NCBI GenBank assembly: GCA_965112735.1
Contig: OZ218952.1
Coordinates: forward strand, 2,294,001-2,358,000
Direction of reading: 5' to 3'
Source of the DNA: Phaeosaccion multiseriatum
Lineage: Eukaryota; Protista; Ochrophyta, other classes
Length of the DNA: 64,000 nt
This document shows positions 4,089 to 64,000 of this stretch, piece by piece. Under the pieces are notes generated by a model. The model did no database searches, was not told the origin of the DNA, and was given only the letters and a program-made list of their open reading frames with translations. A program made the translations under genes and the position numbers. Position 1 is the stretch's first letter. Each line of letters begins with the position of its first letter.

Positions 4089-6113
4089 CTACCGCTTGCG
4101 AGAGGACGAGAGGTCGATGCCCAAATTCTCCGGGTAGCCCACCTGCTCGCAGTGGGGCCAACTGAAGTCATCATACACGTAGTCAATGCCCCCCTGCCGT
4201 AACGACGGGTCCAGCAGGTCGTACAGCTCTCGGTTGGTGTAAAAGTGGCCCTCATTGTCAAACAAATTCTCGTACCCCAGCACATCCCCCTCGGCGTGCC
4301 CCGCACAGTCCTTGGGTGTGTGTTGGTAATTGCGATCGGGCCAAGTCTCGTCCGACATCCCCGCAAGCCTCCGTACATGCCACAAACGGTCAATGGTCGG
4401 GTGGAGAGGCCAAAAGGCCGGATCTACAGACGCGGCGCTGCTCATGGCATCCCCTACGAAGGGCGTTTCTCCATCCACGTTACAGAACATGGCCAGCACG
4501 TCCTGTGAAATGTCCCTTCCCTTGTGGTCGAGTAGATAGTCCCCGCCAATGGCCAGCTTGGACAGCATCTCGCTCACTCGCCCGTCTCGCACCCACTCGT
4601 CAAAGGCCGGGCAAGTACACGTGCACATCGCCTCTTCGTTCTTCTCCACTTCCTCCTCCCCCTCCTCCGCTTCCTCCAGCTCGGAGCAGGTGCTGTCCGA
4701 CGGGCAGGTGCTGAGGCCGAACCTCCACATGTCCTTCTGGAAACCAAAGGCCTTGAGCGGGATGGCGTTGGCCTTGTTCGGCGCCTGTCCCTCACTCCCA
4801 TACCACTCCAGAAAGCGTGCTTTATAGTCGACGCCCCACGCTCCCGCCAGCAGCGTGTGCACCGACCCGTGCGGCTTGTACTGGATCTGCAGGCCGAAGG
4901 TGGCCCAGTCCGTGAGCTGCAGCTGATCGTAATGGAACTCACAGCCGGGCACCTTGTCGAAAGTGGCCCCAAACATGGTGCGGCTCCTCGATAGGAAGCG
5001 GTCTGGGTTTTGGTTCCAGGGGGAGCGCACCAATCCATAGCCGTTGGTGGGTTGCCCGTCCATGGACTCATTGTCCCAGTCCTTTGGATCTACGGAGATG
5101 AAGCCCCACCGCCCCTGGGTCACCACGTAGTTCTCTTCGGGCGTACCAAAGCCACCCAAGGCGTCGTCTTGCAACACTTCACTGTCATAAAAGGCGTCAA
5201 TGTCCCCCTCTGCCATGATGACATTGGTGGACTCAATGGAGAAGTCCCAATAGGGTATAACGATGCGGCGGTCAATCAGCCGTAGCACCTGCTCAAACTC
5301 CAGCGTCATGGCCATATGGTTGGTTAGGAACCCGAGCCCGTCGTGGGCGTGGTCGCACACCAGCTGCCCCGCCTCTGCGTTGTGCAGCTTCACGTAATAG
5401 AAGGCGTCTCTGTAACCGTTACCGTACACCTCCCTCCCCTCGGCGGTGGGTGTGCGGTAGAGGTACTCCATGGCGTCGAGGAAAGTCGCCTTGTCTTCTG
5501 CGTCTAAAGTGCGGATCTCTCGCCGTACGTACTTGACCACCACCTCCCACGACACGGAGCGGAGCGGCTTGCTCGCGTCGCTCAGGTCGTACTCCTCCAG
5601 CAGCACGGGCACCACTGTTGCTGCTGCTGGTGCTGCTGCTGCAACATTGTTTCTCTCCTCACCCGCTGCTGCGGCTGACCTCGTCGAGAAGACGACGCTA
5701 GCCGTTTTGCCTTCGTACCCCTTTCCTTGCACCACCCAGCGATACCTGAGAGCGCCAGAGCCCTCCACTCCTCCTTCTGCTTCTTGGTGCTCGCTAGGCA
5801 AGCCTAGAGCAATAAGAGTGGTCTCCACGTAGGGCTCTACTATCTGCATGGTGCCCCGTAACCAGGGATAGTTGAGGCCGGCCGGTTTGTGTCGGTACGC
5901 GAGGGTGTACTTGTTGCCCGCGAAGAAGCCAAGGCCCCCCTCCCCTCCCTCTTCCTCGGGCGCCACTGCTGTAAAAATGGCGGGAAAGTACTGCCCCACA
6001 ACCTGTCGTATGAAGGACATGTCCATCATGTCCTCCTCCACGCCACTGGTGTTCAAGTCCTGCCCCCCTTCTCCTCTCTTCTCAAGCCTCGTAAGGATCG
6101 CTTGCTTGAGCTC

Positions 6114-6160
<47 letters not shown>

Positions 6161-6461
6161 GCTGCTGCTGATACTGTTGAGGCTCGTAGCCTACCACCAC
6201 CGTCGAGACTCCGGTGGCAGATAAGGACCTCACGACAGCCAAAGCCGCCACCACTCCAAAGCCTACGACAACCAGCTTGGCTACTCTGCTGCCTCTCCAC
6301 GACATCGACCGGCACACCTCCTCCTTCTCCCCCTCCTCCTCCTCCTCCTCCTCCTCCGGACTCTCCCAGAAACCATACACAGAAGAGGAAGGTAAGGGCG
6401 AAGGAGAAACTGGGCGTCGCCTCTTGCCTGAACTTCCAGACACCGCACCATAGTACCGCAT
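4089..6461 (-). CDS. Tyrosinase / type-3 copper oxidase with N-terminal membrane anchor, intronless, 790 aa
   Basis: VRREIRTL entry motif; CuA region KLHN...CDHAHDGLGFLTNH; PYWDFS; CuB region PHGSVH...ASVDPAFWPLHPTIDRLWH; hydrophobic LVVVGFGVVAALAVV near the N-terminus. The start could be the downstream Met (MSWRG). Confidence 0.9.
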
Positions 6462-26759: not shown

Positions 26760-29700
26760 TTACATCCTCCTCCTCCTTCTCCTCGTCGTCGTCGTCGCAT
26801 CAGCAGCAGCAGCAGGCGAGTCCTCGGCGCCCTCCGCTGCAGTAGAAACGTCCTCCGCCTCATCCTCTGCATCAGCAGCTGTACCAGCATCATCATCATC
26901 ATCATCATCATCACAATCAGATACCTCCGCAGGCTCCTGCTCAGGCTCGACAGGCTCCGCCTCTCCCTCTGCGGAAGGTCCACCTCCTGCCATCTCTTGC
27001 TCCAAACCAGAAGTGCCCTTCTCTTCAATCCCTACTTGCTCTCCCTGCTGTTCCTCCACCCCAGCGGCTGCCTCTGCCTCAGCAATGCTGTCCCCCTTGT
27101 CGCGCTTCTTCTTGCTCTTGGTCTTCTCTTTCTTACTCTCCTTGCCCTTGCCCTTGCCCTTGCCCTTGTCCTTGCCCTTGCCAGCCTTCTCCTGTTGGCC
27201 CTCCTCCCCCCCGCCTGCCAGGAAGGTCTTGTACTTTTCAACAATGTATTCAAACCTCCTGCGGTCAACCTTCAGCCCTGACTCCTTCATGTCCTTAATC
27301 TGCCGTGTGGTGTGGTGTGGTGTGGTGTTGTGAGTGTTGCAGTTGGTAAGGACGAAGAAAAGGAGGGGAGGGGGAGGGAGGGACAGCGGCCGAAGGCATG
27401 AGATGGTTTAAAGCGAATGCACTAGGGACAGTATATATATACGAAGTGAAGGATCTCCTTGTAAGTAGCTAATGAACTTGGGATATGAACACGAAACAAA
27501 CAAACGCCCCCACTTTCCCTCGTCAGAGACGCCTAGGCGCTCGTTTGAGAGAGGCCGGAATATAGAGCGTGAAGGAGGATGGAATATCGAGCACCGAGGA
27601 GGAATATCGAGCCTCGAGGCGGACGGAGGGGAGTCGAGTTCCTCTACACTTACCAGCAGCAGGCCCTGTCGGTAGTCGTGAGCCACCCCACAGGCGTCGA
27701 TAGCCACGTGATAAGTGACTCCGTCGGGCTTGAGACCGAGTTGCTTCATCTCCTCGAGGAGCCTAAGGGTGGCCGGTACGTCTCCGTTCTTGGCGAAGGA
27801 AGCGATGGCGCTAGTGTATGTAATCTCGTTGGGGGTGAGGCCCTTTATTTCGTTTGGTGCAAGGGGATGGTGCACAAAGTCCGGAGGAGGAGGAAGAGGA
27901 GGGGGTGGGGGTGGATGGAATGGGTATGAGTGGGTATGAGTGGGGGCAAGCAAGCAAGCACGGACAAGCCGGGGGGCGGGGTTGCGTATAGAGAGAATCA
28001 GAGGTCCGTCCTCATCACCCTCCCTCCCTGCCTCTCTCTCTCTCTCGCGCCCCCTCCTTCCCTCCCCTCCCTCAGCTCCCGCCCCCCTTGTCCCTCCAGC
28101 TTCCCCCTCACCCACCCTCCCTCCTCCCCCGTTGCTACATACTTGGGCCTCACCTCCATTCTCATTTCCTCCAACAGCCACTGCGCGTCACCGGAGCTTC
28201 CCGCCTTTGCAGCAGCGGAGATGGCGTAGTTGTACACCATGACGTCAGGCTTCAGACCCTCCCCGCGCAGCTGTGCGTTCAGTGTACACCAACCAACAGA
28301 CCGACCAAAGGACCATAAAGAAGGGCAAAAGTGGACAGCACCATAAAGAAGGGCCAAAGTGGACAGCGCAGAGCAGAGGAGAGCGTCGGGAGGACACATA
28401 CAGGAGGACGTGAGGAGGACGTGAGGAGGACGTGAGGCAAGCTGGAGGGAACGGGGGAGGGGAGGAGATAGGATGGGAGTGAAGGAGATGTCTGTTTGCA
28501 AGAGCCTCAGGTATGTGTTGGCACCCGTCCATCCATCCGCTTGGGGGCACGGCTCAGCTCAGCTCAGCTGGGCTGGCGAACAACCAACACGCCTACACAT
28601 GTACCTGCTTGAGCATCTTGATGGCCCTGGCCACATTGGCCTCGTCCCCCCCCTGGCACAGGGCGGCGATGAGACCGCTGTACGTCTTAATGTCCGGCAC
28701 AAGCTCCGCCGCTCGGAGCTCCTTCACCAACGCGTACACCTGCCCCGTGCGTGTGCGTGTGGACGTGGGCGTGTGGCGCGTGGGGTGAAGTAGGATGGGG
28801 TGGGATGGGGTGGGATGGGGTGGGATGGGGTGGGGGGAGGGGCACGGCAGAAAGAGAGACGAAATGACGAGATTCGAAGTCAGCTTCGCTTGGGGCAACG
28901 TACAAGCGCTGTTGAGGGGGTGGATCGGTGGTTTCGGTCAAAACGCCGGGCGGCATCGTTTCGATCACTACCCACCCCCCCTCCCCGTTACACATCTCCT
29001 CATCCCTGAGGCAGCGCCAAAGGGCTGGCAACCGAGCACCCCTCCCCCCTCCCCAAATCCACTCTACCACCCTACCTTGCCGGTCTTGCCAGCCCGCGCA
29101 CAAGCGTCAATGCACGCGTTGTAGAGGGGCAGGGTCTGCAGACCTTTCTCCACGGCCTCCTTGAAGATCATGATGGCCTTGTCGGCACGCTTGGCGTTGC
29201 CTGCAGCCTTGATGGCCTGTGTGTAGCTCATCTCATCAGCCTCGAGATTCAGCGTCTTGAGGGTGTCTGCCAACTCGTTGGCCTTTGCGGGGCGGTCGGC
29301 GTTGTTGCACGCGGCCATGGCAGCGGTATATGTGACCACACTCGGCTCCATCCCTCGCTGCTGCATCTCGTTCATCAGAGACAGAGCGGCATCTGCCTCC
29401 CCCGCCCTACTGCATGCGTTGATGGCGGTGTTGTAGGACCAGTCATTGGGGGTAAAGCCTCGCTCCGCCATGTCTCGAAGGAGTCGAATCGCCGCCGTGT
29501 GGTTGGCAACATTGGCCGCCGCATCGATGGCCGAGTTGTACACCACATCGTTGAGGGGCACCCCTTCCTCTCGCATGAGCTTCATGTAGCCAAGTGCGGC
29601 CTTTAGGTCTCCGGCCTTGCCCACCGCGCTAATGGCAATGGCGTACGTCTTTTGCCCCGGCTTGATGCCCGCCTCCTTCATCTCCTCCATCAGTCTCTTG

Positions 29701-30773
29701 GCCTCCTCCAGTAGTCCCCCCTTCTGACACGCCCCCAAGGCGGCGCCATAGCAAATTTCATCCGGGGGCACGCCATCGGCTTTCATCTTTTCCAGCACCT
29801 TGAGAGCTTCTTCCGGTCGGTTCACCTTGGTGCAGCCGTGGATGCACGTCGTATACACCACCACGTCGGCTGGGAACCCCTTCTTGTTCATAGTGTCGAT
29901 CATCTCGATGGCGTCTAGCCACCGTCCGGCCCGAGACAAGCTCGACACGGCCGTGTTGTAGATGATGGCGTTGAGCTCAAAAGCCGCTCCATTGAGCGTG
30001 TTGATGATTGTCTTCCATTGGCCTCGGTCCCCCAATTCCTTCAGATGGGACACCAGCTCCTTTTGCTCCTTTATGACCCACGGGTCCGCGTCAGGGTCGA
30101 ACGCCCTCCTGCCCCGGCCTCCCCCCTGTCCCCGCCCCCGACCTCTGCCCGAGAATCTTCCTCCCCTTCCGGGCCCGCCTTCTCCGCCCCCTTCCTCTCC
30201 ACCCATGAAGCCCGCAAAGTACTTTCCTCCGTATCCTCGTCCACTGGCATGGTTCCGCACTCGTTTTGCTCTTCTCTCGTCCCGAGCGCTTCGGGGCTTG
30301 GCACTCTGACTGCCATTAGCACCCGCTCGCGCAAACCTCTCCTTCCTCTCTCGCTGCCTCTGCGAGTACGAGCTGGCGGCGGGCACTTGTGCGTCTGACC
30401 ATCTTCCTTGGGCCGGTGGCTGCTGCTGCCGCTCTTGTCCCTCGCTCTGCTCCAGCGCCTGGCCCCACTCCCCCCCATCTTGGTGGCCCTGGTCACCATC
30501 TACTGCAGCAGCGTCGAGCATCTGAGGGTCCTGTTCGCCCCACTGAGCCATAGCCACATGAATGCTCCTCCTACTGCCTGCGGATAGCGTCCATTGTCTT
30601 CTCCGCCCACTTTCACTGTGGCCACTCGCCCGTGCCTTCTCCGGAAGGGCCCCACCAAGTGCTGCTGCTCCTGCTGCTGCTGCTGCTGCGGTCCCGAATC
30701 TCAAGGACGGTGTCACCGCAAAGGCTGCGGTCGAGCCTCCGGCGGCCTGGCGCCCCATTGTGAGGTGTCCCAT
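26760..30773 (-). CDS. P-class pentatricopeptide repeat protein, probably organellar (at least 5 exons)
   Basis: More than 12 tandem 35-aa repeats (e.g. IIYNTAVSSLSRAGRWLDAIEMIDTMNKKGFPAD, VVTYTAAMAAC, ITYTSAIASFAKNG) over exons near 29073-30773, 28603-28738, 28141-28270, 27651-27843 and 26760-27300. STAA-FAV suggests a plastid presequence; an upstream exon may be missing. Confidence 0.92.
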
Positions 30774-43840: not shown

Positions 43841-46800
43841 TCACGGCACTTCCCTTGCTGCCCTTTGTAGTACTCGGGTCGAGTGTTGACAGCCCCTGCG
43901 ATAGAGCGAGGGAGGGAGGGAGGGAGGGAGGGAGGGAGGAGGAAGGGAGGGAGGGAAAAGGCAAGTGTCGGTAAGTAACAGCAAAACGAGAGAGAGCACA
44001 GACTTTGAGGTGCTGACCACGCCCTGACTTGAATTGTCACTTGGCGACACTCCACAGCAGGGCGATGCTGTGGTGCGGCGATCGTTCAGTGGTGTCGCTC
44101 GGTGGTCTCCCAGACCCAGCCACGCCACTCACTCTTCGCACTCACGCACTCACGCACTCACCTGACCCTGGAGCAGGCAGGACTGTGTCTCTCTCGTGCT
44201 CTCGGCGTTCTGCTTTCCTGCTCCAGGGACAAGCTTGTCGAGGAACTCCGCCTTCGGAACGGTAGAGCGACCTACAAGCAGAATGCATGCACGCACGCAC
44301 GCACACATAAATAATCACTCGCTTGTTCACTCACGCAGTCACCCACGCACTCACGTACTGACTGACTGACTGACTGACTGACTGACTGACTGACTGACTG
44401 ACTGAGTGACTGACTGACTGACTGACTGACTGACTGACTGACTGACTGACTGACTGACTGACTGACTGAGTGAGTGACTGAGTGAGTGAGTGAGTGACTG
44501 AGTGAGTGACTGACTGACTGACTGACTGACTGACTGACTGACTGACTGACTGACTGACTGACTGATTGACTGACTGACTGACTGACTGACTGACTGACTG
44601 ACTGACTGACTGACTGACTGACTGACTGACTGACTGACTGACTGACTGACTGACTGACTGACTGACTGACTGACTGACTGACTGACTGACTGACTGACTG
44701 ACTGACTGACTGACTGACTGACTGACTGACTGACTGACTGACTGACTGACTGACTGACTGACTGACTGACTGACTGACTGACTGACTGACTGACTGACTG
44801 ACTGACTGACTGACTGACTGACTGACTGACTGACTGACTGACTGACTGACTGACTGACTGACTGACTGACTGACTGACTGACTGACTGACTGACTGACTG
44901 ACTGACTGACTGACTGACTGACTGACTGACTGACTGACTGACTGACTGACTGACTGACTGACTGACTGACTGACTGACTGACTGACTGACTGACTGACTG
45001 ACTGACTGACTGACTGACTGACTGACTGACTGACTGACTGACTGACTGACTGACTGACTGACTGACTGACTGACTGACTGACTGACTGACTGACTGACTG
45101 ACTGACTGACTGACTGACTGACTGACTGACTGACTGACTGACTGACTGACTGACTGACTGACTGACTGACTGACTGACTGACTGACTGACTGACTGACTG
45201 ACTGACTGACTGACTGACTGACTGACTGACTGACTGACTGACTGACTGACTGACTGACTGACTGACTGACTGACTGACTGACTGACTGACTGACTGACTG
45301 ACTGACTGACTGACTGACTGACTGACTGACTGACTGACTGACTGACTGACTGACTGACTGACTGACTGACTGACTGACTGACTGACTGACTGACTGACTG
45401 ACTGACTGACTGACTGACTGACTGACTGACTGACTGACTGACTGACTGACTGACTGACTGACTGACTGACTGACTGACTGACTGACTGACTGACTGACTG
45501 ACTGACTGACTGACTGACTGACTGACTGACTGACTGACTGACTGACTGACTGACTGACTGACTGACTGACTGACTGACTGACTGACTGACTGACTGACTG
45601 ACTGACTGACTGACTGACTGACTGACTGACTGACTGACTGACTGACTGACTGACTGACTGACTGACTGACTGACTGGACTGACTGACTGACTGACTGACT
45701 GACTGACTGACTGACTGACTGACTGACTGACTGACTGACTGACTGACTGACTGACTGACTGACTGACTGACTGACTGACTGACTGACTGACTGACTGACT
45801 GACTGACTGACTGACTGACTGACTGACTGACTGACTGACTGACTGACTGACTGACTGACTGACTGACTGACTGACTGACTGACTGACTGACTGACTGACT
45901 GACTGACTGACTGACTGACTGACTGACTGACTGACTGACTGACTGACTGACTGACTGACTGACTGACTGACTGGCTGACCTTTGCAGAGCTTCTCGAAGT
46001 CCGCCTTGATGCTCTGCAGAGCCTGCATGTCCAGCCTGCCTTGCTTCATCAACTGAAGCGATCGAGCAAAGTAATAAAGCAAACGAGCCAGTCAGTGGTA
46101 CCACAAGAGGGACGTGGTTAGTCAGAAGAATGAGGGTGTCGGACCCAAAGGCGGGCGTCAAAGAGCTACCCACTAAAGAGTCACTCACTGCTCTCCGAGG
46201 ATGAGGCAGTGATGGAGCCGTCGAAAGCAAGCAAGCATAGCAAGGAATCCACCCACCCCTATACTCGTAACTCTCCACACAACATGCCTGTCCACCCCTT
46301 CCTCCTTCCTCCTTCTCTTGCCTTCCTCCAACTCCTCACCATGAGGCACAAGAACTCTTCCTGGTCGATCTCGGCGTCCTTGTTGCCCAAGCAGTCCAGC
46401 ACCTGCAGGTCCGCTCGCGTCAGCTTCTCCTCCAGCTTGGAGGTCAGCTTGGCCTCCTGTGGCGACGATTGAGCACACACATCCGAACGGCCATCAGCAG
46501 CAGCAGAAGAAGCGTATGTGAGCAAAGCAGTCCATATGAACTGCGGAGGTTAGTACTCCGGTCGGCCAGCGCCTCTGCCCCTCTGTCCGGTCCTGCGCAC
46601 GTGTCGCTCACCTGGTAGCGGTCAACGATGACGCTTGCCACGCGACCAAGAGCCATGGCGAAGATTGGGATACTTTGGTACGCGAAGGAAGGAAAGAAGG
46701 AAGAAGGAAGGAAATGAGGAATGGAGTAAGGAAGGAAGGAAGGTAGGCAGGAAGGAAGGAAGGAAGGAAGGAAGGAAGGAAGAAAGGAAGGAGGGAAGGA

Positions 46801-58864: not shown

Positions 58865-60031
58865 ATGAAAGCTCAGAAGAAGCAGCAGCCGCAGCCGCGG
58901 CAGGAGCGGCAGAGGTCGACGCCAACCACGACGCCCACTGCAGGAAAGAGGAAGAGAGCAGGAGAAGAGGACAAGACACCTCTTATGAGCAGGCGAAGAT
59001 GTGAGTCTCGGCAGCACGGGGAAGCAAAGCTTCTGTCGTGTCCTCCCGCCGTTCCTTCTGGCGGCTGCTGCTGCTGGTGGTACGGCTGTAGCAAAGCTTA
59101 CGCGCTCGCAATTCGAAGCCTCATTTCTCCCCTTTCTCCTCCTCCTTCCCTTTCACCGCTTCCCTTCTGTCCTGCTCCCTGACAGCTGCTTCACTCAAGT
59201 CACCAGGCAGGAGAAGGGAGTCCTACGTCAGCGCTCCCGAGTGGCGAACCTCACGGGCGGAGGAGAGGGATATCGTCCTGGATCGCCTCGTCAAGGAGCT
59301 TGTTCCGCTGCTTGAATCAGGTGCGTAAAAGTACACACAGCTCAGGGCCTGTGTTTTGCGATTAAGAGGGCCAGAGTGATGAAGGAGGCTACCATCTTGA
59401 TACTACCCTATTCGCACTCTCTCTTCCTTTCTCTCTGTGTGTGTGCGCAGAGGACTCCAAGCGTGCCGCTCGTCGGCGCTTGTGCTTGGGGATAAACGAA
59501 GTGACGAAGCGCCTCGAGAAGATGAGAGAACGCGCTGTGGCGGCGGCAAAGCCTCCCCCCCGTCACGGGAAGGACAATAGCAAAGAACCAGTCCAGGCGG
59601 AAGGAGGGAAGAGCAGCAGAATTAGTGAGGACGAAGTGGGTCGCGGATTGGGGCTGGTGGTGTTGTGTCGAGACGTTCGGCCGGCGAGTCTCATCACCCA
59701 CCTGCACCCTTTGCTGGTCTGGGCGCAAGTGCCTCTCCTCGTGTTCCCCGCCGCCAGCAAGAGGCTGGGGGAGGCAATGAATCTCAAGACCATGGCTGCG
59801 TTTGGAATGCTCTACAAACAGAAGGAGCACACCGATGATAAGACGTCACCGCCGGCACAGCAGATGAGACCGAAGGGAGAGCAATCTGCCTGCGCATCAG
59901 TCACTGTGACTGCGGATGCCCCAGATGGGCCCAACGAGGCGGAGGAAGCGGCTGCGATGAGAACTGCCGTGGACTTGCGGATAGACTCACTCATCACCTT
60001 CCTGCAGGAAGGCGCGCAACGTGTGACCTAA
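58865..60031 (+). CDS. L7Ae-domain protein, RNase P/MRP subunit RPP38/POP3-like (exons 58865-59000, 59186-59320, 59451-60031)
   Basis: PEWRTSRAEERDIVLDRL, LCLGINEVTKRLE, LVVLCRDVRPASLITHL, VPLLVFP..SKRLGEAMNLKTMAAFG. An alternative in-frame ATG lies at 58730. Confidence 0.75.
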
Positions 60032-60308: not shown

Positions 60309-63151
60309 TCAGGTAGATTCTTTTCTACCTGCTTTGCTATCAGGCCTCCTGTACAGGTCCTTTTGGGCCTCCCTCTCCTTTCTCCTACCTCCAACGTCCG
60401 CCTCCACCCTCTCAATCTCTTCCGAAAAGCCCGGGTCCATCAAGGGCAGCATGGCACTGCGCAGGCTGTTGTACAGAGTGGGCAAAAGTGACTCCTCCTG
60501 AGCCAGCATCTTCTTGACGCGCTCCCTCTCCTTGGGCTCCTCGAAGCAGGCGGGGCAGTTCTCATTAATGACAGGCAGCCTGGCGTCCTTGGCAAAGGCC
60601 TTGAGCTGTTTCTCACGCACGTACACCAGCGGGCGGATGATAGTTACGTCTCCTTCGTCGTTGGTGTACATGGCCTTCATGGTCCGGAGCTTGCCGTTAC
60701 GCATCACGCTCATCATGAAGGACTCACCGAGGTCGTCCAGGTGCTGCAGATGATGAGAAAGTGAGACGTAAAAGTGTATGGTGTGTTGCAAGGGCGGGCG
60801 GAGGGGAGGGAGGAAGAGGGGGGTTGAGGGAAATGCAATGCGTTGATTAAGGAAGACATTTCCCTCAAGTGCCATGTATGTATGCGCTGGCCATCTTGAT
60901 CAAGATCAGTCCATTGTGATGTCATCGATCAATATCAATCCTGACATCGAGATGGAGAAGTCGAGATATGGCCTCGCACACGTCATTCATTGCCTTGATC
61001 TATTGTGCGAGCCCGGCCAACACCAAGCGTGACAGGACAGAGTGGTGCAATTACTCACCTGCGCCAGCACGAGCTTGTTATAGCCCTCCTCGCGGCAGCA
61101 GCGATACAGCAGGCCTCGCTTCATGCGGCTGCAGTAGGCGCAGATGCTGTCCCCCTGTTCGAAGGGAAGACATGCAGGCAAAGAGAGAGAGGGGGGGGAG
61201 GAGAGAGACGGACAGAGAGAGGGAGAGAAAGAGACGAGAGAGAGAGGGAGAGAGAGGGATGGCTGCAGTGTTCAGGCTACCAGGCAAGAGGTAAGATGAG
61301 CACTCGGTACTTACGAGCACCACCCAAGGTCAGGTCACAGTCACAGTCACAGTCACAGTCACACTCACCAATTTATTCACTCACCCACCCACCCACTCAC
61401 CCACTCACGCACTCACCTGCAGACTAATCTTGGCCCTCTCTATAATGGCGTCACTGAGATAATAATACTTGACCCCCAATTGGGCAAGGTATGGGATCAT
61501 GGGCGACGGATCGAAGGAGGGCGTCTGCGGGTCCACTGTGGCACACGCAATTTCAAACCGAAAGGGCACCTTGGCCTGCACTTGCAGCAAGATGTGCAGC
61601 AGAGAGAGCGAGTCCTTGCCGCCCGATAGCCCAAGCAAGAGCCTGTCCCCCGGGGCGATCATACCCCAATCCTTCATGCCTTGGCCCGTGGCTCGCATCA
61701 GCTTCTGCGGAATCTTTGGTCGCAGAGTGGCCTGCTTGCTCGCTTGGTTGGCGCTGTCGATTCCTCGCATCAAGCCCTCTAATTTGATCGGTATGAACGG
61801 AGCTTCTGCCGCGGTGGCTTCTTCCCCCCCCCGTCCTCTCCCAATGCTACTCGGCTCCTGCTCTTGTCCTTGCAGCTGCGGAGGAGTCCTCTTTTCTTGT
61901 AGGGCCTCTTGGCGCCACTGCCCAACCTTTCTCTGAGGGTACTTGCTGTCTTGTGGTGCCGCGCTTCCCCCACTTGAGCCTGAGCCCTGCTCGGTGACCT
62001 TCTCCTTTTTCTCCTGCTCGACCCTCTTCTGCGTGGTGACGGCGGGTGGTGACTGAGCCACCGCCACGGGAGGTCTCGGCATTGCTGATGAGTCGTCGTT
62101 GTCTTCTCCACCTCGCCCGCCGGTTCTTAAGCCTCTTGCTCCTCCTCCTCCTCTGCCTGTTGCTCCTACTATTGCTCCTCCTCCTTCTCCTCCTCCTCCT
62201 CCTTCTTCTTCTTCTCCTCCTCCTCCTCCTCCTCCTCCTCCTCCTCCTCCTCCTCCTCCTCCTCCTCCTCGCCCTCCCTCTACTGCTGTACCTGCTGCTG
62301 TTCCCACAACCGGAGTGGTCTCGCTACTCTTGCTGTCGTCGTCGTCGTCGTGCTCGCTGCTGTCTAGAGCGTCAGCATCATCCGTAGAGCCATCGTCGCT
62401 CTCCGCGCTGCGACCGTAACGCTCGGGGTCGATGGTGCCCAGGGCAACCTCTTTCGACAACTGCTGCTCCTCCTGCTGCTGCCTCTCCTGCTCACCCCTC
62501 CATGCCTCCCCCTCCCAAGGGTACACGAACCAACGCAATGCCTCGTCCTCCTCCCCCATCACCTCCCCCGGATTGGAGGCCTTGACCTCCTTCTTATTCC
62601 CTCCCCCATCCCCTCCCTGCAGGCTGCTCAGCGTCTCTTCCGCCGTCCGCTTCACCCCCTCGAAAAGGGCCTCCTCGCTCTGTCCATCCGCTTCAGCCGG
62701 CGCCAAAGGCAGTCCCTTGGAGAGGAGTGATGGTGATGATGACGATGATGCTGATGATGACGTGCCGCCAGCGCCAACAATAGTGGGAGGAGGAGGACGG
62801 GCAGCGGCGGCGCTTGCCCCGAAATTCCCCAACCACACACGCTCCGGAAACCTCGAGAACCTGGACTGGTGCTTCCACTCCCCTGTCTTATGGTTGGGGC
62901 GATACTGCGAGAGGAAGCAGTGTCCATGCGAGGCCACAAACTCCACGGCGCTCAGAATGAAGTCGACTTCTGCGTCGGAGGCAAAGTAGGCGAGCGAGAA
63001 GCGCGTGAAGCCGGGGCGGAGGAGCTCGCGCTTCCTGAGAAGGGCCGCCTCCAGCGCGCGAGTTTGTGCCTCGTCCATGCCCAGCAGGGCCTGTGCGTAC
63101 GGACCGGCACACATGCAGCCGCCTCGGCTTTGAATGCCAAACAGGTCTGCG

Positions 63152-63213
<62 letters not shown>

Positions 63214-64000
63214 GGGCAGGGAAAGCGCGCGTTGCGGAGGGGGTGACAAGGAGAAAGACAAGGGACGAAGGAGGCGAATACGGGGGGGTGGTGGTGAGGG
63301 AAGTAGCTTGGGCCATTAGCACTTCACAAGCTGGGTGCCTTCCCACTCTCTCTCACAGAGGCTGTCGCTCTTCTTTGACAACACTCACCGTTCAGAAGGG
63401 CACCCACGAAATTGTAGTGGAGGAACTTGTTGGGCCGCGCAACCCCAGCAGCAGCGGCACCATCCCCACCTCCACCAACCCCACCAAGCGAACCATCTTC
63501 GGCGCCTCCTTTGCCGTGCGGGTCATCTCTCCTGATGAGAAAGCTCAGGATGGGCAATCTCGCCGCCGCCAGGTTCCCGAGGAGAGCAATACTGGGGTGG
63601 GAGGATAGCCTCCTCAGCGCCAGTTGGGCCAGCTGCTCCTCTCGCTGCTCGATGGCCTGCACACCCATGCGGGTCTTGAGCTGCATGACGAGGCCGAGGC
63701 GGATGGCGCCCAAGATGTCCGGTGTGCCCCCTTCCTCCCTCTCCTCTCGGTTGCTCAAGTAGCGGTGGTCCTCGGCAGTCACAAAGAAGACCGTGCCACC
63801 CCCGGGCGCGCTGGGGACGGGGTTGGCGAGTAACCGCTTCTTGATCACCATGACGCCAGGGCTGCCCGGCCCACCCACGAACTTGTGCCCCGAGAAAAAG
63901 ATGCCATCCTTGTACACGTAGGGGGCGTCCTCTCCGGGAAGGATGGGGTTCATGTCCATAGGCACATAGGGTGCCGCAGTGGCGTAGTCCCAAAAGGACA
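60309..64000 (-). CDS. Fusion of a class-V PLP cysteine-desulfurase-like domain and a TtcA-type tRNA-cytidine(32) 2-sulfurtransferase; 5' part lies beyond the window
   Basis: Exons >64000-63389, 63146-61417, 61154-61059, 60743-60309, all phase-compatible. Desulfurase motifs: WDYATAAPY, FSGHKFVGGPGSPG, EEGGTPDILG, LLN|DLFGIQSRGGCMCAGPY. TtcA motifs: GLSGGKDSLSL, SICAYCSRMKRGLLY, LAQ|HLDD, IIRPL, ENCPAC. One exon spans both domains. Confidence 0.92.

What the first reader, a model, noticed from the sequence alone, without database searches (positions are those of the whole stretch)
60309..64000. Eukaryotic cysteine desulfurase-TtcA fusion: a possible one-polypeptide tRNA s2C32 thiolation system
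Seen: one exon (63146-61417) runs without a stop from the desulfurase C-terminus (RGGCMCA, the position of the SufS/CsdA catalytic Cys loop RxGxxCA) through a long low-complexity linker into the PP-loop SGGKDS. The fusion is therefore not a splicing artefact. The PLP lysine (SGHK) and both TtcA Cys motifs (CAYC, CPAC) are intact. Established: TtcA is an Fe-S PP-loop ATPase that makes 2-thiocytidine at tRNA position 32 in bacteria and some archaea, with sulfur supplied by a separate desulfurase (IscS); s2C is not a recognised eukaryotic modification, and eukaryotic s2U34 uses Ncs6/CTU1 with Urm1. Inference: this intron-containing nuclear gene carries its own sulfur donor, implying an uncharacterised s2C (or other thiolation) pathway in algal cytosolic or organellar RNA. 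Similar predicted fusions may exist in other protist genomes, but I know of no functional description.
Basis: partly seen in the sequence, partly recalled or inferred. Interest (0 to 1): 0.85.

Follow-up and report, generated by a model that had tools for sequence, protein, structure and literature searches.

The report
Fused cysteine desulfurase–TtcA-like tRNA thiolase gene
The window really does encode one protein joining a sulfur-releasing enzyme to a TtcA-like RNA-thiolating enzyme, but it is an ordinary member of a gene family found across many eukaryotes, which a 2026 preprint has already tied to 2-thiocytidine in sea-slug tRNA.

Summary
On the minus strand, four exons with GTGAGT...CAG introns encode 956 in-window residues. 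The order is a SufS/CsdA-like (type II) desulfurase domain, a low-complexity linker, then a TtcA-like PP-loop domain. The N-terminal ~240 residues lie beyond base 64000. Exon 63146-61417 carries RGGCMCAGP, the whole linker and SGGKDS in one frame with no stop (0 of 5000 shuffles are stop-free). The PLP lysine, the catalytic-loop cysteine and the four TtcA cysteines are intact.

The C-terminal domain matches TtcA far better than TilS, TtuA or NcsA. It stays below NCBI's TtcA equivalog cut-off and falls in a TtcA-like clade separate from the characterised enzymes. Its nearest bacterial relatives are unfused proteins of sulfur-oxidising Proteobacteria.

The fusion is not rare. More than 1000 database proteins share the architecture, from stramenopiles, alveolates, Heterolobosea, choanoflagellates, chytrids and animals, and several come from transcripts. 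A September 2026 preprint reports s2C32 in Aplysia tRNA-Lys and names this fused gene as the candidate.

Function in this organism is inferred, not shown. It is a new member of a known kind, of moderate interest.

The parts
63389..64000 (-). Exon A (partial; reading frame starts at 63998). It encodes the C-terminal half of the Aminotran_5 desulfurase core, including FFSGHKF with the PLP lysine codon at 63884-63882. The gene continues beyond the window end.
   Evidence: Pfam Aminotran_5 1.8e-19. NCBIfam best hit is the SufS subfamily at 58.7 bits. tblastn of P0009 and P0121 covers 63998-63390. In homologue P0009 the same FSGHK string aligns to E. coli SufS Lys226.
63147..63388 (-). Intron 1 (242 nt, GTGAGT...CAG, phase 1). 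It contains a (GT)31 microsatellite at 63151-63212 that abuts the acceptor.
   Evidence: The joined sequence YNFVGALLNDLFGIQSRGGC matches the homologue string YNFVCALLNDLFGVQSRGGC without a gap.
61417..63146 (-). Exon B (1730 nt). It encodes the desulfurase catalytic loop, the family-specific C-terminal extension, the low-complexity linker and the N-terminal part of the TtcA-like domain, all in one frame.
   Evidence: ORF, splice sites, shuffle test.
63100..63126 (-). RGGCMCAGP catalytic-loop motif. Cys216 of the in-window product (63111-63109) is at the position of SufS Cys364. A second invariant Cys214 (63117-63115) gives a C-x-C motif.
   Evidence: HMMER alignment of homologue P0009 to E. 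coli SufS/CsdB 1c0n: 'srggcqcagp' against 'vrtghhcamp'. Cys214, Cys216 and Arg211 are present in 39 of 40 aligned fusions.
62512..62538 (-). LRWFVYPWE motif, a conserved island inside what looks like linker. It marks the end of the C-terminal extension of this desulfurase family.
   Evidence: Trp is conserved in 39 of 40 fusions. The motif is also present in unfused paralogues of Pythium, a chytrid and Albugo, and in one bacterial 571-aa homologue. tblastn similarity to homologues runs down to 62512.
61717..62496 (-). Low-complexity linker of about 260 residues (Gly, Glu, Ser, Asp and Gln runs). It includes a period-3 array at 62139-62270 that encodes a poly-Gly/Glu run.
   Evidence: Identity to 40 homologues is 0.00-0.14 and column occupancy is low. 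Period-3 tandem array. No in-frame stop. Homologues carry linkers of 90-735 residues.
61609..61626 (-). [quoted passage not shown]
   Evidence: Invariant in 40 of 40 fusions. Pfam ATP_bind_3 and NCBIfam TtcA profile positions 8-104 match here.
61155..61416 (-). Intron 2 (262 nt, GTGAGT...CAG).
61059..61154 (-). Exon C (32 codons): GDSICAYCSRMKRG...LVLAQ. Cys785 and Cys788 (61142-61131) align with E. coli TtcA Cys122 and Cys125.
   Evidence: NCBIfam TtcA profile positions 120-149, 30.6 bits. Alignment. Invariant in 40 of 40.
60744..61058 (-). Intron 3 (315 nt, GTGAGT...CAG).
60309..60743 (-). Exon D: HLDDLGESF...NCPACFEEPKERE... followed by a poorly conserved tail and the stop TGA at 60311-60309. 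Cys875 and Cys878 (60557-60546) align with E. coli TtcA Cys210 and Cys213.
   Evidence: NCBIfam TtcA profile positions 152-249, 72 bits. Pfam ATP_bind_3 9e-8. Alignment. Invariant Cys.

Best explanation
The window holds the 3' three-quarters of an intron-containing nuclear gene, most similar to stramenopile genes. Its product is one polypeptide with three parts. The first is a PLP-dependent, SufS/CsdA-like (type II) cysteine desulfurase domain with a family-specific C-terminal extension. The second is a disordered low-complexity linker of about 260 residues. The third is a TtcA-like PP-loop ATPase domain whose CxxC...CxxC cysteines should hold a [4Fe-4S] cluster. The gene belongs to a family with this same order of domains that is conserved in many eukaryotic lineages. 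Proposed mechanism (inferred). The desulfurase domain converts L-cysteine to alanine and loads a persulfide on the loop cysteine of RGGC-M-C-AGP. The flexible linker lets that loop, within the chain or across a dimer, reach the TtcA-like domain. There the sulfur is taken up at the free iron of the three-Cys-ligated [4Fe-4S] cluster. The PP-loop adenylates C2 of the target pyrimidine of a tRNA, most likely C32, and sulfide displaces AMP to give 2-thiocytidine. What is shown: gene structure, domain identities, intact motifs, conservation of the fusion, and the nearest relatives. What is inferred: enzymatic activity, direct intramolecular sulfur hand-over, substrate and position, and cytosolic location (suggested only by the short acidic N-termini of homologues).
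For: Gene model and open linker. Desulfurase domain: Aminotran_5. The best solved relatives of homologue P0009 are SufS/CsdA-type desulfurases, and its FSGHK and RGGCxCAGP strings align to SufS Lys226 and Cys364. TtcA-like domain: three collinear matches to TtcA model NF007972 of 74, 31 and 72 bits, against 20-31 bits for TilS. Full-length homologues score 203-206 bits for TtcA, 53-61 for TilS, 39-42 for TtuA and 26-34 for NcsA. The four cysteines align with E. coli TtcA Cys122, 125, 210 and 213. The review PMC5372739 states that three Cys of the two CXXC motifs bind the essential [4Fe-4S] cluster. An AF2 model of a homologue's domain (pLDDT 82.7) matches the [4Fe-4S] thiolases NcsA and TtuA, and also TilS, at TM 0.68-0.73. 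Conservation of the fusion: 192 of 274 fetched proteins have desulfurase, then a 90-735-residue linker, then TtcA-like. 190 clusters at 50% identity score below 1e-30, and nearly all of the top 150 match both ends of exon B. 1033 proteins of fused length score at or below 1e-20. Transcript-derived members carrying both domains include Thalassionema (MMETSP), Biecheleria (Trinity), Choanoeca and Sphaerothecum. Functional link: s2C32 was mapped in Aplysia tRNA-Lys(UUU) and a fused CsdA/TtcA-like gene with conserved C-x-C and CPAC was proposed as responsible.
Against: No activity, RNA or modification data exist for this organism. The TtcA-like domain is only 31.5% identical to E. coli TtcA. It is below the curated equivalog cut-off and is separated from the characterised clade by a long branch, so the same substrate and position are not guaranteed. 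The Aplysia evidence is correlative and comes from a preprint with no knockout or reconstitution. Type II desulfurases normally need an acceptor protein such as SufE, SufU or CsdE (my own knowledge), and direct transfer to an Fe-S enzyme is unproven. The N-terminal half of the desulfurase, with its His and PLP-ring contacts, lies outside the window. The linker could be cleaved after translation, or could contain an unrecognised intron.
Confidence: 0.6

Rival explanations
1. The architecture is the same but the chemistry or target differs. The TtcA-like clade (eukaryotic fused domains plus the unfused proteins of sulfur-oxidising Proteobacteria) would thiolate another nucleoside or position, another RNA class, or a non-RNA substrate, rather than C32.
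For: Scores are below the TtcA equivalog cut-off at 189-224 bits, against 402-514 for proteobacterial TtcAs (E. coli, P. aeruginosa, Legionella). The clade is separate from canonical TtcA, across a branch of about 2.1 plus 1.2 substitutions per site. Identity to E. coli TtcA is only 31.5%. No member of this clade has been tested biochemically, as far as searches show.
Against: TtcA is by a wide margin the closest characterised family. The Cys and PP-loop motifs correspond one to one. The Aplysia preprint finds s2C32 in an animal whose only TtcA-type gene found by BLAST is this fusion.
Confidence: 0.2
2. The two activities are only co-expressed, not channelled. The desulfurase domain would feed general sulfur needs or merely build and repair the [4Fe-4S] cluster, or the linker would be cut so that two independent enzymes result.
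For: The linker is long, disordered and unconserved. The same desulfurase family exists unfused in oomycetes, chytrids, green algae and bacteria. The bacterial TtcA-like relatives work without a neighbouring desulfurase. The preprint itself raises cleavage as a possibility.
Against: The order desulfurase, linker, TtcA-like is kept across eukaryotic supergroups in hundreds of sequence clusters. That argues for selection on physical linkage rather than on mere co-expression.
Confidence: 0.15
3. Gene-prediction artefact: two neighbouring genes that happen to share a frame across a low-complexity spacer.
For: GC3 in the linker is lower than in the domains. There are no RNA data for this locus.
Against: There are zero in-frame stops over 350 linker codons, and 0 of 5000 shuffles are stop-free. 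The same fusion is present on assembled transcripts of several relatives. A conserved motif (LRWF) lies inside the apparent spacer.
Confidence: 0.02
4. The C-terminal domain is a TilS (lysidine) or Ncs6/TtuA (s2U or s2T) type enzyme rather than TtcA-type.
For: It shares the PP-loop fold. Foldseek cannot separate these families because no TtcA structure is solved.
Against: HMM scores for TilS, TtuA and NcsA are 3-6 times lower than for TtcA and far below their cut-offs. There are no N- or C-terminal zinc-finger Cys pairs of the TtuA/Ncs6 kind: the only cysteines in the domain are 738, 785, 788, 799, 800, 875 and 878. TilS roots outside the whole group on a very long branch.
Confidence: 0.02

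Closest known systems
Fused 'IscS-TtcA' (CsdA domain plus TtcA-like domain cd24138) of Aplysia californica, LOC101861551, and its mollusc homologues (bioRxiv 10.64898/2026.09.27.754811)
   Same: The domain order is the same, with a long poorly conserved linker (405 aa in Aplysia, about 260-340 aa here). Also shared are the conserved PLP lysine, two conserved cysteines two residues apart in the desulfurase (Cys448 and Cys450 there, Cys214 and Cys216 here), SGGKDS, and a CxxC...CPAC arrangement.
   Different: This copy is from a stramenopile-like protist rather than an animal. The first motif is CAYC rather than CSFC. The preprint did not recognise the SufS-type catalytic cysteine, which the alignment places at the second Cys of C-x-C.
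Bacterial TtcA (E. coli b1344, Salmonella), supplied with sulfur by IscS/IscU
   Same: PP-loop SGGKDS, both CxxC motifs at equivalent positions, a similar domain length, and the same superfamily.
   Different: 31.5% identity. Below the equivalog cut-off. A separate clade. In bacteria the sulfur source is a separate type I desulfurase, IscS. Here a type II-like desulfurase is covalently attached.
Unfused TtcA-like proteins of sulfur-oxidising Gamma- and Betaproteobacteria (Thiocapsa, Thiofilum, Thermithiobacillus, Acidithiobacillus, Ectothiorhodospira and others)
   Same: 50-59% identity over about 240 residues. The same CA[YF]CSRMKRG, QHLDDLAES and NCPACF motifs. The same sub-threshold score on the TtcA model, 201-224 bits.
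   Different: They are 260-300 aa stand-alone proteins with no desulfurase within 4 kb. They have not been characterised experimentally as far as I could find.
[4Fe-4S]-dependent tRNA thiolases TtuA and NcsA/Ncs6
   Same: Same fold (TM about 0.7) and the same logic of a three-Cys cluster that carries the sulfur.
   Different: TtuA and Ncs6 have extra zinc-finger Cys pairs and use ubiquitin-like thiocarboxylate carriers (TtuB, Urm1). The zinc-finger pairs are absent from the sequence here, and no carrier domain is fused. HMM scores are low.
Type II cysteine desulfurases SufS and CsdA with their acceptors SufE, SufU and CsdE
   Same: Aminotran_5 fold, the FSGHK lysine, and the R-x-G-x-x-C-A-x-P catalytic loop.
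   Different: Only 59-111 bits on SufS models whose cut-offs are 475-661. HHC is replaced by C-x-C. There is a C-terminal extension of about 200 residues ending in LRWF. No separate acceptor domain is detectable, and the fused thiolase may play that role (inference).

Membership tests
TtcA, tRNA 2-thiocytidine(32) synthetase (NCBIfam NF007972 equivalog) | PP-loop ATP-binding motif SGGxDS | tested here: met
   SGGKDS at 61626-61609. Invariant in 40 of 40 fused homologues.
TtcA, tRNA 2-thiocytidine(32) synthetase (NCBIfam NF007972 equivalog) | Two CxxC motifs at the positions of E. coli Cys122/Cys125 and Cys210/Cys213, three of which bind the [4Fe-4S] cluster | tested here: met
   Cys785/788 and Cys875/878 align column for column with the E. 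coli residues. The requirement is stated in PMC5372739. Cluster binding itself was not tested.
TtcA, tRNA 2-thiocytidine(32) synthetase (NCBIfam NF007972 equivalog) | Score at or above the curated whole-protein cut-off of 272 bits | tested here: not met
   The window pieces score 74.2, 30.6 and 72.0 bits. Intact homologous domains score 189-221 bits. Positive controls: E. coli 514, P. aeruginosa 493, Legionella 402.
TtcA, tRNA 2-thiocytidine(32) synthetase (NCBIfam NF007972 equivalog) | Falls inside the clade of experimentally characterised TtcAs | tested here: not met
   The canonical TtcAs form their own clade (SH-aLRT 99), reached by a long branch. The window groups with eukaryotic fused domains, next to the TtcA-like clade of sulfur oxidisers. 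This was a quick search, and the root on a single TilS sequence is unreliable.
TtcA, tRNA 2-thiocytidine(32) synthetase (NCBIfam NF007972 equivalog) | Forms s2C at position 32 of tRNA | not testable with these tools
   There is only correlative evidence, from a relative (the Aplysia preprint).
Eukaryotic fused desulfurase-TtcA-like family (Aplysia LOC101861551 type) | One polypeptide: N-terminal Aminotran_5 domain, a variable linker, and a C-terminal TtcA-like domain | tested here: met
   for the window. 192 of 274 fetched homologues have the same order.
Eukaryotic fused desulfurase-TtcA-like family (Aplysia LOC101861551 type) | Conserved C-x-C in the desulfurase loop and a CPAC second motif in the thiolase | tested here: met
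   RGGCMCAGP and NCPACF are present. Both are conserved in 39-40 of 40 homologues. The preprint describes the same features.
Eukaryotic fused desulfurase-TtcA-like family (Aplysia LOC101861551 type) | Direct sequence relatedness to the Aplysia protein | not tested
Animal (Acropora), choanoflagellate and chytrid members were found with the same queries.
TtuA / Ncs6 / NcsA 2-thiouridine-type thiolases | HMM score above cut-off, and N- and C-terminal zinc-finger CxxC pairs | tested here: not met
   26-54 bits against cut-offs of 450-500. There is no cysteine N-terminal of the PP-loop or after Cys878 within the domain.
TilS lysidine synthetase | TIGR02432 N-domain score at or above 93.6 | tested here: not met
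   20-31 bits for the window pieces and 53-77 bits for intact homologous domains.
Type II cysteine desulfurase (SufS/CsdA) | PLP-binding lysine and a catalytic cysteine in an R-x-G-x-x-C-A loop | tested here: met
   FFSGHKF and SRGGCMCAGP are present. The identical motifs of homologue P0009 align to SufS Lys226 and Cys364.
Type II cysteine desulfurase (SufS/CsdA) | Score above the SufS/CsdA family cut-offs | tested here: not met
   58.7 bits for the in-window piece and 82-111 bits for full-length homologues, against cut-offs of 475-661. It is a distinct Aminotran_5 subfamily that also exists unfused in eukaryotes and bacteria.
Type II cysteine desulfurase (SufS/CsdA) | N-terminal half of the fold, with its PLP-ring and acid-base residues | not testable with these tools
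   It lies beyond base 64000 of the window. It is present in homologues.

The most novel reading that the evidence does not exclude
The fused family, together with its unfused relatives in sulfur-oxidising Proteobacteria, would be a lineage distinct from classical TtcA that was present early in eukaryote evolution, since it is found in Opisthokonta, SAR and Heterolobosea. It would act as a self-contained thiolation machine that bypasses the ISC/Urm1 sulfur relays, with a persulfide passing directly from a C-x-C desulfurase loop to an Fe-S thiolase. Its product in protists could be s2C32 on cytosolic tRNAs, or a thionucleoside or position not yet catalogued.
Probability: 0.2. Interest if true: 0.7.

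Novelty: new member of a known kind. Interest (0 to 1): 0.4.

Why it matters
s2C32 was long regarded as a bacterial and archaeal tRNA modification. A widely conserved eukaryotic gene that carries its own sulfur donor would mean that many protists, algae, early-branching fungi and invertebrates thiolate tRNA by a route independent of the known Nfs1/Urm1/Ctu1 pathway, with consequences for decoding and for sulfur and iron sensing. This window adds no new principle beyond the September 2026 preprint and the existing database entries. It does give a clean genomic example with an uninterrupted exon across the junction. The comparisons made here also add some context to that preprint. The catalytic cysteine is of the SufS type. 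The fusion spans several eukaryotic supergroups. The nearest bacterial relatives are a distinct TtcA-like clade rather than canonical TtcA. The 'linker' begins with a conserved extension of the desulfurase family.

Tried and rejected
PDB sequence searches with single exon pieces gave only chance hits. They became informative only with the full-length homologue P0009.

An exact look-up of a neighbouring window ORF found nothing on record, so the source organism could not be named. I can only say that both domains are closest to stramenopile sequences. Pfam on the large window ORFs did not help with taxonomy either.

The first tree, with E. coli TtcA as the only canonical sequence, was uninformative because of a 4.5 substitutions-per-site branch. 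It was redone with eleven more bacterial sequences taken from plasmid and chromid records. Even so the backbone is poorly resolved, and rooting on a single TilS sequence is unreliable.

I looked for a desulfurase next to the bacterial TtcA-like genes, as a possible operon ancestor of the fusion. None lies within 4 kb in 80 loci.

I followed a remembered lead that Arabidopsis At5g26600 belongs to the desulfurase subfamily. The literature search returned only H2S-related listings and I did not verify membership, so the lead is dropped.

Foldseek cannot discriminate TtcA from TtuA, NcsA or TilS, because no TtcA structure is solved.

There are no tRNA genes in the window.


Full report
**Observation.** The minus strand of 60309-64000 carries the 3' part of a split gene. 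ORF listing and direct reading give four exons:
- Exon A: window edge to 63389, in frame from 63998.
- Exon B: 63146-61417.
- Exon C: 61154-61059.
- Exon D: 60743-60309.

The three introns are 242, 262 and 315 nt, and each runs GTGAGT...CAG. Joining the exons yields 956 residues and one terminal stop. tblastn of two full-length homologues against the window reproduces the same borders. The segments are collinear and no residues are lost at the junctions: P0009 residues 241-414 | 415-586 ... 677-787 | 787-819 | 819-922. No second copy of either domain exists in the window.

It starts in the desulfurase (DLFGIQSRGGCMCAGPY), runs through a Gly/Glu/Ser/Asp-rich stretch, and ends after SGGKDS. The 350 linker codons hold no in-frame stop, against 8 and 7 in the other frames. 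Shuffles average 11.4 stops, and none of 5000 is stop-free. The linker's GC3 (0.56) is lower than that of the domain-coding parts (0.72-0.77). A period-3 array at 62139-62270 encodes a poly-Gly/Glu run. The stretch therefore reads as low-complexity coding sequence. Only RNA data could exclude a small in-frame intron.

**Desulfurase domain.** Exon A matches Pfam Aminotran_5 at 1.8e-19. Among NCBIfam models it matches the SufS subfamily best, at 58.7 bits and far below the cut-off. The full-length homologue P0009 (Saprolegnia, 56-59% identical to the window here) finds only SufS/CsdA-type (type II) desulfurases among solved structures. In the printed alignments its FSGHK aligns with the PLP lysine of E. 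coli SufS. Its SRGGCQCAGP aligns with VRTGHHCAMP, so the second cysteine falls on catalytic Cys364. The window has the same strings, FFSGHKF and SRGGCMCAGP. Arg211, Cys214, Cys216 and Arg252 are conserved in 39-40 of 40 aligned fusions.

The Aplysia preprint compared with IscS and did not identify it. The family differs from SufS in three ways: C-x-C replaces H-H-C, about 200 extra residues follow the loop, and an LRWF(V)YP motif ends that extension. That motif lies inside the apparent linker (62538-62512). It is conserved in all fusions, and it also occurs in unfused paralogues and in one bacterial 571-aa homologue. The truly unconserved linker is about residues 421-680 of the in-window product.

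Unfused members of this desulfurase subfamily are numerous in oomycetes, chytrids, Micromonas and bacteria (Myxococcota, Gemmatimonadales, Alphaproteobacteria), at more than 50% identity.

**Thiolase domain.** The three coding pieces hit the NCBIfam TtcA equivalog model NF007972 in order:

| Piece | Profile positions | Bits |
|---|---|---|
| Exon B (C-terminal part) | 8-104 | 74 |
| Exon C | 120-149 | 31 |
| Exon D | 152-249 | 72 |

TilS reaches only 20-31 bits on these pieces. Intact homologous proteins score 203-206 bits for TtcA, against 53-61 for TilS, 39-42 for TtuA and 26-34 for NcsA. Aligned with E. coli TtcA, the window's Cys785, 788, 875 and 878 fall on Cys122, 125, 210 and 213. Three of these four bind the essential [4Fe-4S] cluster according to PMC5372739. 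There are no extra zinc-finger Cys pairs of the TtuA/Ncs6 kind. An AlphaFold model of a homologue's domain (pLDDT 82.7) matches NcsA, TtuA and TilS at TM about 0.7. No TtcA structure exists to compare with.

The domain is nevertheless not a demonstrable TtcA orthologue. It is 31.5% identical to E. coli TtcA. It scores below the curated 272-bit cut-off, which E. coli, P. aeruginosa and Legionella TtcAs exceed at 402-514 bits.

A scan of one genome per prokaryotic species found much closer bacterial relatives, at 50-59% identity with the same CA[YF]CSRMKRG and NCPACF motifs. They are 260-300-aa proteins of sulfur-oxidising Gamma- and Betaproteobacteria. These too score 201-224 bits, and none has a desulfurase within 4 kb.

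In a 120-sequence tree the canonical TtcAs form one clade (SH-aLRT 99). That clade joins Firmicutes, Bacteroides and Streptomyces 'TtcA'-type proteins on a 2.1 substitutions-per-site branch. The sulfur-oxidiser proteins form another clade (90) lying among the eukaryotic domains. The window sits in a cluster with Chrysoparadoxa, Ectocarpus, diatom/Triparma and oomycete sequences. The backbone is poorly resolved and the TilS root is unreliable, so I draw no conclusion about direction of transfer.

**How common is the fusion.**
- Searching with the PP-loop end of exon B returned Aminotran_5 plus PP-loop proteins of 900-1000 aa from oomycetes, Ectocarpus, Triparma and diatoms, plus a Symbiodinium 'ttcA'.
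- An exhaustive HMMER search found 190 clusters at 50% identity below 1e-30. Nearly all of the best 150 match both ends of exon B.
- 192 of 274 fetched proteins have the order desulfurase, then a 90-735-aa linker, then TtcA-like.
- Named members add Chromera, Perkinsus, Biecheleria, Thalassionema, Choanoeca, Sphaerothecum, Batrachochytrium salamandrivorans and Hyaloraphidium.
- A further search gave 1033 proteins of fused length at or below 1e-20. It added Acropora, Salpingoeca, Naegleria, Willaertia, Acrasis, Percolomonas, Stentor and a pelagophyte.

Several of these come from assembled transcripts, so the domains are on one mRNA in relatives. The family thus spans Opisthokonta, SAR and Heterolobosea.

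**Literature.** Full-text searches found one paper on the fused family: bioRxiv 10.64898/2026.09.27.754811, dated 28 September 2026. [quoted passage not shown] It identifies LOC101861551, a 1177-aa protein with a CsdA domain, a 405-aa unconserved linker and a TtcA-like domain, with conserved Cys448 and Cys450 and a C-CSFC-CPAC arrangement. It notes homologues in 28 molluscs and, as data not shown, in birds and insects. The evidence there is correlative.

**Mechanism (inferred).** The desulfurase domain makes a persulfide on the C-x-C loop. The flexible linker lets it reach the thiolase domain of the same chain or of a dimer partner. The sulfur is received at the free iron of the [4Fe-4S] cluster. 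The PP-loop adenylates the target C2, and sulfide displaces AMP. The most likely product is s2C32 on cytosolic tRNA. Homologues have short acidic N-termini without obvious presequences, but the N-terminus of this gene is outside the window.

Rivals are a different substrate or position for this TtcA-like clade, co-expression without channelling (or cleavage of the linker), and, very unlikely, a prediction artefact or a TilS/Ncs6 identity.

**Verdict.** It overstates novelty and goes slightly too far in calling the domain TtcA outright. This is a new member of a known, widespread but barely characterised kind, of moderate interest.

Noticed in passing
window 59441-60031 (+): An ORF with a Ribosomal_L7Ae/L30e-family match (Pfam 5.5e-7) lies convergent to the 3' end of the fusion gene. 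An AT-richer stretch of about 280 nt separates them, with GC falling to about 0.50.
   Followed up: partly
window 63151-63212 and 62139-62270: A (GT)31 microsatellite sits in intron 1 directly against the acceptor site. A 44-copy period-3 array inside the coding linker encodes a poly-Gly/Glu run. Both are likely to vary in length between strains.
   Followed up: partly
window 63441-63524 (-): A Gly/Ala-rich insertion of about 27 residues (DPHGKGGAEDGSLGGVGGGGDGAAAAGVARPN) sits inside the desulfurase core and is absent from almost all homologues (column occupancy 0.03). It is too short to be an intron of the local type, so it is probably a translated low-complexity insert.
   Followed up: partly
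P0192:178-201 (Chromera velia homologue); PF12171 also listed for P0436, P0438-P0442 and others: Many alveolate and metagenomic members of the fused family carry a zf-C2H2_jaz (double-stranded-RNA-binding zinc finger) match in the N-terminal part of the protein. That fits an RNA substrate. The Chromera hit is just under Pfam's cut-off (21.5 against 22.6 bits). The corresponding region of the window gene lies outside the window.
   Followed up: partly
P0484 (JGI metagenome protein, 1382 aa): One fused homologue also has a thioredoxin domain (PF00085). This hints at a built-in reductant for persulfide or cluster chemistry.
   Followed up: no
L001-L080 (bacterial loci): There is a coherent clade of stand-alone TtcA-like proteins in sulfur-oxidising Gamma- and Betaproteobacteria (Chromatiaceae, Thiotrichales, Hydrogenophilales, Acidithiobacillus, Ectothiorhodospiraceae, a Francisella MAG). 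It is closer to the eukaryotic domain (50-59% identity) than canonical TtcA is, and it falls below NCBI's TtcA cut-off. Its function is apparently untested.
   Followed up: partly
window 4089-6461 (-), 29064-30773 (-), 44272-46278 (-): Other long ORFs in the window: a tyrosinase-domain protein, a PPR-repeat protein, and a DUF445 protein with a Gly-rich tail that hits Gp5_C repeats, which is probably a low-complexity effect. Long uninterrupted ORFs suggest a fairly compact, intron-poor nuclear genome of about 58-60% GC.
   Followed up: partly
One search hits, e.g. Albugo laibachii F0WEJ0 (fusion) and F0WEJ4 (unfused); Phytophthora kernoviae BBJ29_009179 and BBJ29_009180: Oomycetes keep several unfused paralogues of the same desulfurase subfamily. 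Their near-consecutive accession numbers and locus tags suggest they may lie close to each other or to the fusion gene, which hints at tandem duplication. Gene positions were not checked.
   Followed up: no
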